Shown: positions 1,421 to 20,525, counted from the first letter of the stretch. The stretch: 64,000 nucleotides of DNA from Setoptus koraiensis (GCA_048013815.1 CM106586.1:17112001-17176000); one strand, 5' to 3'. Numbers and translations are program-made. Notes: generated from the sequence alone by a model not told the origin.

Positions 1421-2031
1421 CTAAATAAATAGCATGTTGATTTTGTTATTAGACTATACTTTTGGATGAGTCAAGATGCACTGTGGTAGTTACTGGTGTT
1501 GTTGTGTAACGATGACAGCGTTAAATTAAAGCTGCAACATACGACGTGAGATATTCAGCATTAACAGCTGATAATGGCAGTGGCATTTCTTAGAGTACAG
1601 TGACATCCCTTGCATTGCGAAAATTTTTATACATTTGTGACACAAAGACGGCAACAACCTCTTGTACTCTTGCCTTCATTCCAAACATTACAAATCATCC
1701 AGAGCAAATGGCACCCTCACTATTTCTGGAAATTGTATAGATTATATAGCAACAATAGAAGGCACAGTATCTCACAAAGTAGTAGAGCATGATCTGCAAG
1801 ATTCCATCTGAACATCAGCAATACAACATCGACTGTAGCGCGCCGGATAAAGTTATAGTAAGTGGCGAGTATTCTGTTGTTTACGGTAAGGTGAGTTTAA
1901 CGACACCCAATAACTTGAGGAATTATTTTTCTTCTACTATTCGACAGTATATACCTCTAACCACTTGTTGCTTTTCTCCTTCCTCGCGGACACATATTTA
2001 CCATGTATTCTAAGTAGGATGCATGCAGTAG
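1421..2031 (+). pseudogene. Inverted partial duplicate of the mevalonate kinase upstream region, exon 1 and intron 1 (donor locus 10147-11363, minus strand)
   Basis: 1421-1590 matches rc(11170-11363); 1630-1790 matches rc(10740-10905); 1810-2031 matches rc(10147-10375). It encodes CSAPDKVIVSGEYSVVYGK followed by gtgagt at 1891, against CSAPGKIILSGEYSVVYGK/gtgagt in MVK. The intron copy ends at aagtag (2017). Confidence 0.92.
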
Positions 2032-3719
2032 ACCACCGATACGTCAAAAACAACGGAGTCGCCCCGCAACTGCCCAACGTAAAGGCAAATGGATCGGCGG
2101 ATGCTAACATCAACAGCAAAAGTGCCCTGGCTTTGGTGGAGGTGAGGCGAAAATTTGTCCAGTATGCTGAAGAGAATCCCGACAAGGTGAACGAACGCGA
2201 CTTGAAGCGCCTCAAAACCGACGACTGGTATTTGAAACGTTACCTGTTGGCTAGAAATAGGAAGGTCCAAGACACTTTAGACATGCTGAAGCACACAATG
2301 GAATGGCGCAACGAATTTGGCATTCACCTGTCCGAAGATTCCATGTTTCCGCAGGAATTCTACAAAGTAGGCGCCCTATTTCCGTACGAAAATGATAAAA
2401 AAGGCAATTCTGTCCTGTATATGCGCATCAAATATCACAAGAAAATCACCGAACTAGTTGAGGTAGAAAAACACTTTTTGGTGCACACCTTGGAGAAAAT
2501 AGATCGCATAACAAATGGCAATGGCTTAGTAATAGTTTTCGATTGTCACGAGGCCAGCTACTCGAACTGCGACATGGAATTCTTGCAATTCTTGATTTCG
2601 TACGCCGCCGAACACGCACCCGCCGGACTCCAATACATAATAGTGTACAAGTTGCCCTGGGTACTGAATGCCTTTTGGAGTTTGGCCCAAAAATTGTTGC
2701 CTGCTTATCTGGCGAACAAGATTTGCTTCTGTGACGAAACAAGCATTTTGCAGTGCATAGACAAGGATAATTTGCCTGACTACATGGGTGGATCCTGTCG
2801 GCGCAACTACCGCTGGATTCCGCCAGGCAGCCCATCAGTGTTCAAGCTTGCCAGCGCTTACGGAATTTCCGACGAGGATGTAGAAGGGTTGTTGCCTCAT
2901 TTTCAGGCATTTTTGGATGAGGCCGATGAGGTGCTCAAGAGAAGTGACTACGTGGATCCGCCCGCCGCGATAACGCAATACATGAACAATCCCGAGATCG
3001 CCCGCGACATGATGGCCGACTTGGTGCTCGGCTCCGGCGAGCGCAGTCAGACGAATACTGTGGAAAACAGCAACAACAGCAGATCACAGCACCATTTGAA
3101 CGCTACCCAACCCGTTGGTCACGACAAATCACTGGTGCGTGTATTCCCGCAACGATTTTGCTTATTCACACCCGATTCATTTGACGGTATCTGTAACGCA
3201 ACCCTGACCGTGTTCAATCCAAGCCAACACGATACTCTTGCTTTCAAGCTCCAAACAAACAGACCCGCGGCCTACCGGGTTCAGCCAGCCCGAGGTTTGG
3301 TGCAACACGGCTCGTCTGTAAGGCTCTACATATCACTATTAGAGGAGCACGAACAGGGGGACGAGTTTCTATTAATTGCTCAACGCGTGCCGGCACACGT
3401 AGAAAAGATGCCAGCCAGCGAGTTTGAGTCCCTTTGGCAACAACAATCTAACTATGTCAAACAACAAACATGTGTGAGATTGGCCTCCCAGATCAGACGA
3501 GGCGCTCAACTAGCCACTGTTTCGGGTTGTGGCCAAACAACTAACAAGACAAAGCCGACATCGACATTATCTAGACAACAACAACAACAATTGAATAGTG
3601 ACACCCAGATACACGAATTGATAGCCACTTGCCATTCATTGAAACGAAGCCAGACTCTTTCAATACTCATCAATGTTATACTCTTGTTGATTATCATAAA
3701 TCTTTTATATTTTAAGTGA
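2019..3719 (+). CDS. MOSPD2: Motile sperm domain-containing protein 2-like (CRAL-TRIO + MSP domain + C-terminal TM anchor); intronless, 566 aa from the ATG at 2019
   Basis: CRAL-TRIO_N motif (TDDWYLKRYLLARN), SEC14-type core (GLVIVFDC...YIIVYKLPWVLNAFW), MSP domain (LTVFNPS...LAFKLQTNRPAAYRVQP) and hydrophobic tail ILINVILLLIIINLLYFK. The ORF-track TTG start at 1965 lies inside the copied MVK intron. Confidence 0.9.
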   Translation: MHAVDHRYVKNNGVAPQLPNVKANGSADANINSKSALALVEVRRKFVQYAEENPDKVNERDLKRLKTDDWYLKRYLLARNRKVQDTLDMLKHTMEWRNEFGIHLSEDSMFPQEFYKVGALFPYENDKKGNSVLYMRIKYHKKITELVEVEKHFLVHTLEKIDRITNGNGLVIVFDCHEASYSNCDMEFLQFLISYAAEHAPAGLQYIIVYKLPWVLNAFWSLAQKLLPAYLANKICFCDETSILQCIDKDNLPDYMGGSCRRNYRWIPPGSPSVFKLASAYGISDEDVEGLLPHFQAFLDEADEVLKRSDYVDPPAAITQYMNNPEIARDMMADLVLGSGERSQTNTVENSNNSRSQHHLNATQPVGHDKSLVRVFPQRFCLFTPDSFDGICNATLTVFNPSQHDTLAFKLQTNRPAAYRVQPARGLVQHGSSVRLYISLLEEHEQGDEFLLIAQRVPAHVEKMPASEFESLWQQQSNYVKQQTCVRLASQIRRGAQLATVSGCGQTTNKTKPTSTLSRQQQQQLNSDTQIHELIATCHSLKRSQTLSILINVILLLIIINLLYFK

Positions 3720-3849
3720 CCCCAATTGACTACATAAATCCACTCAATATAGGTCAAAACCGACGGTCAGCAGTGGCTCTAGTCAGAATCGGATGAGTTC
3801 AAACATCGGCAAAGAATATCTCTACATTTCAAAGATCTAGCTAATGATC

Positions 3850-18835: not shown

Positions 18836-18899
18836 TTGCACTGAGTAAATTTATCTGATACATTTTCGTAATATTATATGTATATATAAGTAGCATAAA

Positions 18900-20107
18900 T
18901 CACCTCTTTCTCTGTTCCATATCTTCCTCCTTCTCTTTTTCAATTTCGGCAACAATTTTCTCAATCTCGGTCGTGCTTAACAATTTCATTGGTGTCTTGT
19001 AAGTCATGATGGCAACCTCGAGGTTCTTGCCTTGGACCACCTCTAAAAGAGCTCTAATTGCTAATTTGATCACCTGGTCATCTTTAGCAGCTATTTCGGC
19101 GCTGTAATTCTTCTCTAGAAACTCCCTCACTGTTTGTGCACTGCGGCCGGTGGAATTTGCTTTCCATTCGTGATATACACCTGCACGGCATAAATGATGA
19201 TATGAATGGGCAAGATGATAGAGATTGCATAATTAATGAATTGATCGTTTTGGCGTCAAGAGGTTCGATCCGTAGATATTGGATCTACTTGAACTCAATC
19301 AGAATCTACATATAATCAGATGTTTCACACCAACGGTGGAACTCATAACAGGTCTGTAATAATATCATCATATCAGTTCTTAGCCAATATATGGCTCGCA
19401 CTTAGTGCTGACCAACAATGTATGGGGCTGAAAATTACCTGATGGATCGGTTTGGAAGAGTCGGGGAGTACCATCATCATCGAAGCCCGTGATAAGAGCT
19501 GAAATACCAAAGGGTCTTTTACCATTTGACTGGGTGTATTTTTGCTTCAATTGAGCAATGAATCTGGTGATGTATTCCAAGCTAACAGCGTCCTCCACCG
19601 TAAGCTTATGAGATTGACATTCTATCTTGGCCCGGTCAATCAATATACGGGCATCCGCCGTGAGGCCTGAATATTTCACACACAGATATAAGAGTGGATA
19701 GAGGATTATGTTAGACAACGGAGGCTACTTGTCAGCAATGGAAACCAGGGATATTCGTGATTAACTCACCGGCGAATGCCATAAAAACATGATTATCTAT
19801 AAGGCATATCTTGCGCATAGTTCTGTCTTCTTGGAGCTTTGCAACTGACTTTTTCTCCACGGCCAATACCACCACATTGTCACCCCTAACACCGACCTGA
19901 AATGATTTTGTACGTATGGATAGACGTATAAAAAAATTAGGAAATGGTGGTTGACTGTCTGATTATGTATTCAAATGATAAAATCCAACAAACTATACTT
20001 ACTGCTGTTGATCCCTTCTTCACTGCCTCCTGGGCGTACTCCACCTGAAATAGATGCCCATCTGGAGAGAATACTGTGATAGCTCTGTCGTATCTGGACG
20101 AACCCAT
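18900..20107 (-). CDS. PSMA7: 20S proteasome subunit alpha type-7 (alpha4), 246 aa; exons 20107-20003, 19896-19770, 19666-19439, 19180-18900
   Basis: [35 protein letters not shown]|VGVRG...FAG|[25 protein letters not shown]...[17 protein letters not shown]...LFQTDPSG|[12 protein letters not shown]. All three introns are GT-AG with matching phases. Confidence 0.96.
19291..19379 (-). ncRNA. SNORD25: Intronic box C/D snoRNA, U25 (SNORD25)/snR56-type, predicted to guide 2'-O-methylation of the 18S G equivalent to human Gm1490
   Basis: On the minus strand: box C ATGATGA (19371-19365), guide ATTACAGACCTGTT (19360-19347) complementary to the conserved 18S AACAGGUCUGUGAU, D' ATGA (19346-19343), box D CTGA (19319-19316, or 19302-19299), and a terminal GAACT/AGTTC stem. 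It is on the same strand as the PSMA7 host intron. Confidence 0.82.
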
Positions 20108-20525
20108 TTTTATTCAGTACAAGATATTGTAATCAAGCTTATATAATATAATAGTCTTCTAACCACAATTCTAGTGTTTCTATCTGATGAAATTTCAGCG
20201 ATTACATGCCACCAACGTAAATCGCAGAATATGTGTCTGTTTGCGTGCGTGTGCGAAAAGCTAAAAATCAAATGTGCACTATTTTTGAAAATCTCCAGCT
20301 CTCTTTGAGCCATGGAACGAACAGCCGAACGCGCTTGCACTCCCCAGCCACTCGTTTCGACTGAACACACTATCCGGAAACTGAAGCGCCGATGGCGCCA
20401 TCTCGACTACACGGTCGCTATCAACCTGGCCCGAACAGCCGCACCGTTCTCTCAGGCCCACTTGCACCGCCCACTGCGTCACCCCCTATTTGACTATCGA
20501 TGGTCTATAAGATAGCGACACAATT
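20108..20525 (-). promoter_or_regulatory. PSMA7 upstream region/5'UTR with a near-perfect DRE (TATCGATG 20495-20502) and an AGATGGCGC (YY1/CTCF-like) motif near 20395
   Basis: Lies immediately upstream of the PSMA7 ATG; motifs read directly from the sequence. Confidence 0.6.

What the first reader, a model, noticed from the sequence alone, without database searches (positions are those of the whole stretch)
1421..20525. Recurrent promoter-cassette reuse: two intronless genes sit behind copies of neighbouring housekeeping 5' regions, with breakpoints at the ATG
Seen: two independent events within 20 kb share one geometry. (1) ELOB upstream DNA is a colinear diverged copy of PSMA7 upstream DNA, and the similarity stops at the start codon. 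(2) MOSPD2 upstream DNA is an inverted copy of the MVK upstream region, exon 1 and intron 1, and the similarity stops 10 nt after the MOSPD2 ATG. Both recipients are intronless and both donors keep introns. Known: MOSPD2 and ELOB orthologues are normally multi-exon in animals, and cDNA-mediated recombination is the standard explanation for precise intron loss. Inference: this lineage may relocate or rebuild genes by dropping a processed coding sequence into a duplicated expression cassette (a CDS swap in a duplicate). That would be a route to new promoters and genome compaction that I do not recognise as described in this form.
Basis: partly seen in the sequence, partly recalled or inferred. 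Interest (0 to 1): 0.85.

Follow-up and report, generated by a model that had tools for sequence, protein, structure and literature searches.

The report
Two genes borrowed neighbours' front ends

Summary
Both similarities are real and far beyond chance. An inverted, partly deleted copy of the MVK 5' region lies at 1421-2031. It holds upstream DNA, the exon-1 tail, all of intron 1 and 10 nt of exon 2, and it abuts the MOSPD2 reading frame. The 215 + 107 nt upstream of Elongin B (ELOB) are a colinear copy of DNA upstream of PSMA7, with the two ATGs in register.

The closest available relative resolves the MVK event. Its MVK locus is colinear with the window for over 5 kb, non-coding DNA included, so the MVK-side copy is the original. 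The MOSPD2-side copy arose after the species split. It then lost 291 and 372 nt and gained the 4-nt GATG that creates the MOSPD2 start codon.

MOSPD2 and ELOB align to that relative only over their coding sequences, so the recipients changed context while MVK did not. ELOB lies next to PSMA7 in six more distant relatives, head-to-head in five.

MOSPD2 and ELOB are also single reading frames in all relatives found. Intronlessness is therefore ancestral, and nothing points to a processed cDNA.

Best reading: DNA-level grafting of a neighbour's 5' module onto a rearranged gene. Use as a promoter is inferred, because no RNA data could be obtained. Unchecked notes from this scan report about ten similar cases elsewhere in this genome.

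The parts
1421..1597 (+). MVK-like copy, block I (distal MVK upstream DNA)
   Evidence: Inverted match to 11363-11191: 88% identity over aligned sites, K2P 0.13. It also matches the relative's MVK upstream, L014 2254-2441.
1633..1820 (+). MVK-like copy, block II (proximal MVK upstream DNA); holds an upstream ATG at 1789
   Evidence: 1633-1793 matches 10899-10739 at 92.5% with no gaps. Weaker similarity runs on to 1820. The upstream ORF from 1789 was checked.
1821..1890 (+). Remnant of MVK coding exon 1 (last 23 codons, ..YNIDCSAPDKVIVSGEYSVVYGK)
   Evidence: 91% identical to MVK 10366-10297, with 4 of 6 differences non-synonymous. The conserved APGK motif reads APDK in the copy.
1891..2017 (+). 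Copy of MVK intron 1 with donor GTGAGT and acceptor TAG intact
   Evidence: 91% identical to 10296-10157, with one 12-13-nt gap.
2018..2021 (+). Derived 4-nt insertion GATG that creates the MOSPD2 start codon (ATG 2019-2021)
   Evidence: Absent from the window's MVK and from the relative's MVK (three-way alignment). No indel was reported here in the independent SNP-bearing X5 contig spanning 1968-2320.
2022..2031 (+). First 10 nt of MVK exon 2 (CATGCAGTAG), now MOSPD2 codons 2-4; end of the copy
   Evidence: Without the GATG, the exon-1 remnant would splice in frame into the MOSPD2 ORF.
2019..3719 (+). MOSPD2-like gene, one ORF of 566 aa (recipient 1)
   Evidence: Pfam CRAL_TRIO 1e-23 and MSP 4e-11. 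Its orthologues are single ORFs.
9029..10500 (-). MVK gene (donor 1): exon 1 10500-10297, intron 1 10296-10157, exon 2 10156-9029. The conserved start codon is probably at 10455.
   Evidence: Splice model and 443-aa translation. Pfam GHMP kinase N and C domains. The relative's ORF starts at the second ATG.
10501..11363 (-). MVK upstream region, the source of copy blocks I and II
   Evidence: Colinear with the relative's MVK upstream and beyond, to window 13608. It is therefore the ancestral copy.
17794..18111 (-). Elongin B gene, one ORF of 105 aa (recipient 2)
   Evidence: Pfam ubiquitin family 2e-10. Twelve single-ORF relatives at 50-87% identity.
18112..18326 (-). ELOB upstream, proximal block copied from (or shared with) PSMA7 upstream
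   Evidence: Matches 20108-20324: 83% identity over 198 aligned nt, with the ATGs in register.
18327..18561 (-). 235 nt present only in the ELOB copy, flanked by an imperfect 14-nt direct repeat
   Evidence: The two blocks overlap on 20311-20324 of the PSMA7 copy. The sequence was read.
18562..18668 (-). ELOB upstream, distal block
   Evidence: Matches 20311-20415: 85% identity over 98 aligned nt.
18900..20107 (-). PSMA7 gene (putative donor 2), 4 exons: 20107-20003, 19896-19770, 19666-19439, 19180-18900
   Evidence: The spliced translation gives a 246-aa alpha-type proteasome subunit. Exons are 73-91% identical to relatives.
20108..20415 (-). PSMA7 upstream region, the partner of the ELOB upstream blocks

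Best explanation
Both cases are recent, DNA-level, duplicative grafts of a neighbouring gene's 5' module onto the very start of another gene.

Case 1. About 1.2 kb of the MVK front end was copied in inverted orientation from 8-9 kb away. The piece comprised upstream DNA, exon 1, intron 1 and 10 nt of exon 2. It was joined to MOSPD2 a few codons into its reading frame. Before the later changes, the junction let MVK exon 1 splice in frame into MOSPD2. The copy then lost two pieces (291 and 372 nt, the latter holding the MVK start codon). It also gained a 4-nt insertion at the copied splice acceptor, which gave MOSPD2 its own ATG.

Case 2. A colinear copy of the roughly 310 nt upstream of PSMA7 sits directly in front of the ELOB ATG, with the junction inside the shared ATGG.

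Mechanism. The copies most likely arose by ectopic templated repair or template switching at rearrangement breakpoints that had cut the recipients off from their own upstream DNA. For ELOB, a tandem duplication followed by a deletion between the two start codons is an alternative route. The copies most likely now supply the promoter and leader of the recipients.

The near-ATG junctions are best explained by selection (only grafts that leave the ORF startable survive where intergenic DNA is tiny) together with microhomology at ATGG.

Shown: the copies, their polarity for MVK, their timing, the derived deletions and insertion, the changed context of the recipients, and ancestral intronlessness. 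Inferred: promoter use, the repair mechanism, and the donor polarity for PSMA7 to ELOB.
For: Similarity and register:
- Shown: Polarity and timing of case 1:
- The relative's contig L014 is colinear with window 8082-13608, including 2.2 kb of non-coding DNA upstream of MVK (78% identity) and the downstream spacer (75%).
- The relative holds the 291- and 372-nt segments and lacks GATG.
- Over 510 aligned sites there are 32 copy-specific substitutions, 15 MVK-specific ones and 54 on the relative plus stem branch (binomial p = 0.019). The duplication therefore postdates the split, and the copy evolves about twice as fast as the original.
- The same relative's MOSPD2 locus (L001) has no MVK-like piece within 10 kb upstream.

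Changed context of the recipients:
- L001 and L006 align to the window only over the coding sequences, although non-coding DNA at MVK aligns.

ELOB and PSMA7:
- Adjacent in all six more distant relatives sampled, head-to-head in five of them.
- Both genes start with ATGG in every species sampled.
- The relative's ELOB upstream (1.3 kb) matches neither copy. This argues that the shared DNA was not ELOB's own.

Other points:
- An independent SNP-bearing DNA run spans both copy borders.
- The copies fill almost the whole space upstream of the recipients' ATGs: 1421-2018 of the gap from about 1212 to 2018, and 18112-18668 of 18112-18899.
Against: - No RNA evidence. The runs that could be laid were DNA, and the one putative RNA run had no coverage. 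Transcription start sites and use of the copied intron are unknown.
- The MOSPD2-side copy evolves faster than the original and has lost about half its length, as a decaying relic would.
- If transcription starts upstream of 1789, an upstream ORF of 63-74 codons precedes or overlaps the MOSPD2 ATG. That is awkward for a working leader.
- Donor polarity for PSMA7/ELOB rests on elimination only, because no close relative's PSMA7 upstream could be fetched.
- It is not known which lineage (window or relative) moved MOSPD2 and ELOB.
- The repair mechanism is inferred from geometry alone.
Confidence: 0.6

Rival explanations
1. A processed (cDNA-derived) coding sequence was dropped into a duplicated expression cassette, replacing the duplicate's own coding sequence. 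This would link promoter reuse to intron loss and genome compaction.
For: Relative to the closest relative, the recipients are conserved only over their coding sequences. The junctions lie within 10 nt of the ATGs. Both recipients have no CDS introns.
Against: MOSPD2 and ELOB are single ORFs in every relative found, at identities far below the age of the duplications. About 75-84% of genes are intronless in the eriophyoid mites described (PMC7738191; bioRxiv 10.64898/2026.08.24.746826), if this genome is one. There is no poly(A) tract and no 3'-UTR carry-over after the MOSPD2 stop. No remnant of the donors' coding sequence flanks the recipients. ELOB was already next to PSMA7 in relatives. A cDNA would bring its 5' UTR rather than start at the ATG.
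Confidence: 0.07
2. The copies are inert by-products: dead partial duplicates lying next to the recipients. MOSPD2 and ELOB would be transcribed from the short unshared DNA, or from new sites that merely fall within decaying copy sequence.
For: The copy shows faster evolution (32 versus 15 substitutions). It has two large deletions, and the conserved MVK motif is spoiled (APGK to APDK). An upstream ATG and ORF sit in the presumed leader. There are no RNA data.
Against: The MOSPD2 start codon itself lies inside the copy and was created there. Only about 200 nt upstream of MOSPD2 and about 230 nt upstream of ELOB are unshared, and the latter is the PSMA7 3' end. Both recipients keep long intact ORFs and are conserved single-copy genes in relatives, so they must be expressed from this DNA. 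The ELOB/PSMA7 blocks keep long near-identical motifs despite many indels.
Confidence: 0.2
3. A single micro-inversion with a staggered break across the MVK 5' region made the inverted duplication and put MOSPD2 behind one copy in one step (the Drosophila inversion-breakpoint model).
For: The two inverted copies flank an 8.1-kb segment (2032-10146) and both point inward, with MVK intact at one end. This is the geometry described in PMC1885836 and PMC3355041.
Against: The relative's contig is colinear with the window on both sides of the MVK-side copy: the MVK body plus downstream gene, and 2.2 kb upstream. No inversion breakpoint can therefore lie there unless the relative shares the event, yet its MOSPD2 has no copy. 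The predicted MOSPD2 5' remnant at 11364 onward shows an open frame but no ATG, which is inconclusive. The direct ELOB/PSMA7 repeat cannot arise this way.
Confidence: 0.03
4. The shared segments are copies of a mobile element, a dispersed repeat or a small-RNA gene that landed upstream of the genes independently.
For: The ELOB copy has a 235-nt extra piece flanked by an imperfect 14-nt direct repeat. A further diverged direct repeat (475-881 versus 3983-4228) flanks the MOSPD2 unit.
Against: Only two copies of each segment exist in 64 kb. One segment is plainly MVK exon and intron DNA, orthologous to the relative's MVK. Both ELOB/PSMA7 copies end in register at the ATG. There was no Rfam or tRNA hit in the segments.
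Confidence: 0.03

Closest known systems
Chimeric genes and regulatory-region shuffling by partial (5') gene duplication, as catalogued in Drosophila (PMC5460883, PMC4069613, PMC1463047; review PMC3449122; known to me from titles and abstracts only)
   Same: A DNA-level partial duplicate carrying a promoter, first exon and intron of one gene is fused to another gene's body. In-frame junctions are possible. The events are young and lineage-specific.
   Different: Here the recipients are old, essential-looking single-copy genes whose own front end is replaced, not new extra genes. The donor-derived coding part has been trimmed away (MOSPD2) or was never included (ELOB). One copy is inverted and lies 8 kb from its source rather than in tandem.
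Inverted duplications at inversion breakpoints from staggered breaks (Ranz et al. 2007, PMC1885836; Guillen and Ruiz 2012, PMC3355041)
   Same: Inverted copies of unique sequence, often gene 5' parts, flank a rearranged segment and can change neighbouring genes' structure or promoters.
   Different: This model was tested here and not met for MVK/MOSPD2: the donor locus is colinear with the relative on both sides. The ELOB/PSMA7 copies are direct, not inverted.
Promoter acquisition by relocated or retroposed genes (recalled from general knowledge of retrogene evolution, not read here)
   Same: A gene in a new context becomes expressed by using a pre-existing regulatory region.
   Different: There are no retrocopy hallmarks. 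The regulatory DNA is itself a fresh copy brought to the gene, rather than a resident promoter the gene landed beside.
Reverse-transcriptase-mediated intron loss in eriophyoid mites (PMC7738191)
   Same: The same kind of intron-poor, compact genome. It explains why the recipients have no introns.
   Different: [quoted passage not shown] It is not tied to the two duplications described here.

Membership tests
Partial 5' gene duplication giving a chimeric or re-promotered gene | Paralogous similarity between one gene's 5' region and DNA abutting another gene, well above chance | tested here: met
   E-values from 7e-66 to 3e-39 for MVK/MOSPD2, and 1e-25 and 2e-8 for PSMA7/ELOB.
Partial 5' gene duplication giving a chimeric or re-promotered gene | Donor and recipient can be told apart (polarity) | tested here: met
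   This result applies to MVK to MOSPD2. The copy holds a spoiled MVK exon-1 remnant, and the MVK-side copy is orthologous and colinear with the relative. For PSMA7/ELOB the polarity is only indirect: the relative's ELOB upstream matches neither copy.
Partial 5' gene duplication giving a chimeric or re-promotered gene | The recipient's transcripts start in, or splice from, the copied segment | not testable with these tools
   The one read-laying run returned DNA contigs only, and the putative RNA run had no coverage.
Staggered-break inversion with inverted breakpoint duplications | Inverted copies flank the inverted segment | tested here: met
   1421-2031 and 11363-10147 flank 2032-10146 and point inward.
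Staggered-break inversion with inverted breakpoint duplications | An outgroup shows the un-inverted order, with one copy's outer flank novel | tested here: not met
   The relative's L014 is colinear across the MVK-side copy on both sides.
Retroposed or cDNA-derived gene copy | Intron loss coincides with the event | tested here: not met
   MOSPD2 and ELOB are single ORFs in all relatives.
Retroposed or cDNA-derived gene copy | Poly(A) remnant, carried-over UTRs, target-site duplication | tested here: not met
   There is no A-run after the MOSPD2 stop, and no similarity to the relative's flanks from the stop codon onward. The diverged direct repeat 475-881 / 3983-4228 is older (K2P 0.22-0.28) than the MVK copy.
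Retroposed or cDNA-derived gene copy | A parental copy exists elsewhere in the genome | not testable with these tools
   Only this 64-kb window of the genome can be read.
Dispersed repeat or mobile element | More than two copies, unrelated to genes | tested here: inconclusive
   None is found in the 64-kb window. The metagenome scans were blank, but so was the control pattern, so the organism is not in that collection.
Structured RNA gene | Match to a known RNA family in the shared segments | tested here: not met
   Rfam at the gathering and E<=1 thresholds, and ARAGORN, gave no hit in the shared segments.

The most novel reading that the evidence does not exclude
In this streamlined mite lineage, gene order is scrambled gene by gene. 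Grafting a copy of a nearby gene's promoter-leader-start module onto the broken 5' end would then be the regular way a displaced gene regains expression. Junctions would be funnelled to the start codon by ATGG-type microhomology and by very short leaders. The two cases here, plus about ten others noted elsewhere in this genome by this scan (unchecked by me), would be instances of one genome-wide process of promoter turnover. I found no such process described for any animal.
Probability: 0.35. Interest if true: 0.75.

Novelty: new variant of a known kind. Interest (0 to 1): 0.6.

Why it matters
Promoter replacement of old, conserved genes is rarely caught in the act. Both events here are datable against a sister species. 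For the MVK event the donor is known, and for PSMA7/ELOB it is inferred by elimination. The steps that turned a chimeric fusion into a clean stand-alone gene can be read from the sequence: deletion of the donor's start codon, and a 4-nt insertion that makes a new ATG.

If the process is as recurrent in this genome as the scan's other notes suggest, it would help explain how extremely compact genomes with almost no conserved gene order keep their genes expressed after constant reshuffling. It would also provide natural promoter-swap experiments for co-regulation, for example Elongin B with a proteasome subunit.

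Tried and rejected
1. RNA evidence. Two run searches and the single read-laying run gave DNA contigs only. No transcription start site or splice information was obtained.
2. Exact-protein look-ups of the window's MOSPD2 and ELOB: not on record.
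3. Staggered-break inversion model. It was attractive on geometry but is rejected by colinearity with the relative. The predicted MOSPD2 5' remnant at 11364 onward gave an open frame without an ATG, which is inconclusive.
4. Mirror-image (palindromic) spacers between head-to-head ELOB and PSMA7 in relatives: none found.
5. Conservation of the shared ELOB/PSMA7 upstream DNA in relatives. Nothing beyond chance was found. The last contig look-up hit a distant species with only 118 nt upstream, so PSMA7-to-ELOB polarity stays indirect.
6. Repeat-family test by scanning metagenome contigs with a 30-nt motif. It was blank, and the control motif was also blank, so the test is uninformative.
7. The shared 9-mer TCTAACCAC in all four segments. 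By my own estimate, about one such match is expected between two independent pairs, so I treated it as chance.
8. Rfam and tRNA scans of the shared segments: nothing.
9. Search for leftover MVK exon 2 or PSMA7 coding sequence near the recipients: none.
10. Pfam on the short ORFs flanking MOSPD2: nothing. The flanking direct repeat looks non-coding or decayed.

Full report
**What is there**

A self-comparison of the window confirms both similarities.

Upstream of a 566-aa MOSPD2-like ORF (Pfam CRAL_TRIO + MSP; ATG at 2019) lies an inverted copy of the front end of the mevalonate kinase gene MVK. MVK sits 7-9 kb away on the other strand. The match is in three blocks:
- 1421-1597 matches 11363-11191.
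- 1633-1793 matches 10899-10739.
- 1821-2023 matches 10366-10151.

E-values run from 3e-39 to 7e-66. Identity over aligned sites is 88-92.5%, with K2P 0.08-0.13.

My MVK gene model has exon 1 at 10500-10297, a 140-nt intron and exon 2 at 10156-9029, giving 443 aa. Against this model the copy keeps:
- the last 23 codons of exon 1
- the donor GTGAGT, the whole intron and the acceptor TAG
- a 4-nt extra GATG
- the first 10 nt of exon 2

The copy lacks two stretches of the source, 291 nt and 372 nt. The second holds the MVK start codon.

Upstream of Elongin B (ELOB; 105 aa, minus strand, ATG at 18111), 18112-18326 and 18562-18668 are colinear with 20108-20324 and 20311-20415 upstream of PSMA7 (ATG at 20107). 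The E-values are 1e-25 and 2e-8. With gaps allowed, identity is 83-85% (K2P 0.17-0.20). The two ATGs are in register and similarity ends after ATGG.

DNA contigs from another run that carry SNPs span both borders of the MVK-like copy. The structure is therefore not an assembly artefact.

**The lineage is intron-poor, so 'intronless recipients' carries no signal**

- MOSPD2 is one uninterrupted ORF in about 37 relatives at 53-75% identity.
- ELOB is one ORF in 12 relatives at 50-87% identity.
- On the relatives' contigs even CAD (2274 aa) and a BTAF1-like helicase (about 1950 aa) are single ORFs.
- The only named homologues are mite proteins.
- Other agents' notes call this a gall-mite (eriophyoid) genome. 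I did not verify that.

For eriophyoids, 75-84% of genes are reported intronless. The losses are placed at the base of the group, and gene order is barely conserved (PMC7738191; bioRxiv 10.64898/2026.08.24.746826). Intron loss in MOSPD2 and ELOB therefore long predates the two duplications.

**A sister species polarises the MVK event**

The best MVK relative (78% aa) lies on contig L014. L014 aligns with window 8082-12685 in one colinear piece, and on to 13608 in shorter pieces. The aligned stretch covers the conserved gene downstream of MVK, MVK itself and over 2 kb upstream of it. Non-coding DNA aligns at 75-78%. The MVK-side copy is therefore in its ancestral place on both sides.

The three-way alignment shows that the relative has both 'missing' segments and lacks GATG. 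The two deletions and the insertion are therefore derived changes of the MOSPD2-side copy.

Over 510 aligned sites there are 32 substitutions specific to the copy, 15 specific to the window's MVK and 54 on the relative plus stem branch (p = 0.019). The duplication happened after the species split, and the copy has evolved about twice as fast as the original. The same relative's MOSPD2 locus (L001) has no MVK-like DNA within 10 kb upstream.

This colinearity also rejects a model I had favoured on geometry: one micro-inversion with a staggered break, as in Drosophila (PMC1885836, PMC3355041). No inversion breakpoint can sit at the MVK-side copy.

**The recipients, not the MVK donor, changed context**

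MOSPD2 (L001) and ELOB (L006) of the same relative align to the window only over their coding sequences. Neither the 10 kb upstream and 2 kb downstream of its MOSPD2, nor the 1.3 kb upstream of its ELOB, match anything in the 64-kb window. The MVK control shows that orthologous non-coding DNA should align.

One caution applies. Even at MVK the first 92 nt or so after the stop codon do not align. A 3' breakpoint 'at the stop codon' therefore cannot be claimed. Which lineage moved the genes is also not known.

ELOB did not come from afar. In all six more distant relatives it is next to PSMA7. It is head-to-head with a 385-597-nt spacer in five (L008-L012) and flipped into tandem in one (L007). 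None of their flanking genes is in the window. The window's order, PSMA7 followed by ELOB on the same strand, is a third and derived arrangement.

No relative shows paralogy between the two genes' upstream regions or a mirror-image spacer. The sister species' ELOB upstream matches neither copy. By elimination, the shared DNA is more likely PSMA7's own.

**How the MOSPD2 start was built**

Without the 4 inserted bases, the exon-1 remnant would splice in frame into MOSPD2 (..VVYGK|HAVDHRYVKNNG..). The only ATG in the copied exon-2 piece would then be out of frame and followed at once by a stop.

The simplest path is therefore:
1. An initial in-frame MVK-exon-1::MOSPD2 fusion.
2. Loss of the MVK start codon in the 372-nt deletion, whose edges share ACAT.
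3. The GATG insertion, which gives MOSPD2 its own ATG.

The order of steps 2 and 3 is inferred. The first three residues after the Met (H-A-V) are MVK exon-2 codons. Relatives begin MA(S/A)T.., so only a few ancestral codons were replaced. If the copied region is still transcribed from upstream of 1789, an upstream ORF of 63 codons (spliced) or 74 codons (unspliced) ends at or overlaps the MOSPD2 ATG. This is a point against a clean leader.

**Mechanism**

Shown: the copies are DNA-level, duplicative (the MVK donor locus is intact), local (2 and 8-9 kb from the partner copy) and recent. One is inverted and one is direct.

Not found:
- a poly(A) tract or UTR carry-over
- leftover donor coding sequence beside the recipients
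- an RNA-family hit
- further copies in the window

I infer ectopic templated repair or template switching at breakpoints that cut the recipients from their upstream DNA. For ELOB there is an alternative: a tandem duplication of [upstream + PSMA7 + 3' end], a 1.75-kb unit whose junction would sit where the ELOB copy ends at 18668, followed by a deletion between the two ATGG start contexts. Both genes start with ATGG in all species sampled.

Junctions near the ATG are what selection would leave where intergenic DNA is a few hundred bases long. That the copies now act as promoters is inferred from position only. They fill nearly all the DNA upstream of the two ATGs, and both genes are intact and conserved.

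**Relation to known things and to the rest of this scan**

Partial 5' duplications that make chimeric genes or shuffle regulatory regions are well known in Drosophila (PMC5460883, PMC4069613, PMC1463047, PMC3449122). This case is a variant in which old single-copy genes have their front end replaced and the donor's coding part is then trimmed away. I found no description of this in the eriophyoid genome papers.

Unchecked notes from this scan list about ten similar cases elsewhere in the same genome: POLG/OPA3, PAN3/Sirt1, SAP130/Spt5, URM1, MTERF3/MRPL13, sqh/RpS11, IleRS/MRPL14, CISD3, PIP4K2 and GAPDH. One synthesis follow-up reached the same verdict as I do, 'real, recurrent, not cDNA capture'. 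I treat these as leads only.

**Verdict**

This is a new variant of a known kind. The main gaps are RNA evidence and a genome-wide count.

Noticed in passing
window 19297-19375 (-), inside PSMA7 intron 3 (19438-19181): A weak match to a C/D-box snoRNA family (snR56, 32 bits, E 0.07, below the gathering score). C-box (TGATGA) and terminal D-box (CTGA) motifs are visible. It lies in the longest PSMA7 intron (258 nt, against about 105 nt for the other two). A hosted snoRNA could be why this intron is kept in an intron-poor genome.
   Followed up: partly
window 475-881 and 3983-4228: A diverged direct repeat in two blocks (77-81% identity, K2P 0.22-0.28) brackets the MVK-like copy plus MOSPD2. It is older than the MVK copy. 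Its protein-level conservation is about what neutral DNA would give. It has no Pfam hit. It could be the footprint of an earlier event at the same site or a decayed tandem paralogue; it remains unexplained.
   Followed up: partly
L007-L012 (relatives) and window 17794-20107: The ELOB-PSMA7 adjacency survives in six relatives and in the window while all flanking genes differ from the window's. It occurs in three different relative orientations. ELOB alone is flipped in L007. This is a two-gene micro-synteny block, possibly held together by shared regulation.
   Followed up: partly
window 19769-19667 (PSMA7 intron 2): This intron is present in the window and in L015's species. It is absent (exons 2 and 3 fused in one ORF) in L007 and in several other relatives (P0057, P0061, P0062). 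Intron presence therefore varies within the lineage.
   Followed up: no
window 10500 versus 10455 (MVK start): The first in-frame ATG of the window's MVK (10500) is ATA in the sister species, whose ORF starts at the second ATG (window 10455, MSAGDS..). The conserved start is probably the second one.
   Followed up: partly
window 8162-8602 (+) and 7460-7984 (+): A 146-aa ORF with no Pfam family is 93% identical at the protein level to the sister species (L014 5065-5550). That is much more conserved than MVK (about 76-78%) or MOSPD2 (75%). It may be the last exon of a coiled-coil protein that starts at about 7460.
   Followed up: no
window 12270-15050: Nearly 3 kb has no ORF of 80 aa or more. 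GC reaches 49%, the strand skew switches near 14000, and there are (CA)n runs. Parts (12960-13608) are conserved with the sister species. This may be a long leader, a non-coding RNA or a regulatory region.
   Followed up: no
window 59857-60067: A tandem array with a 10-nt period and about 90% identity between units, seen in the self-comparison.
   Followed up: no
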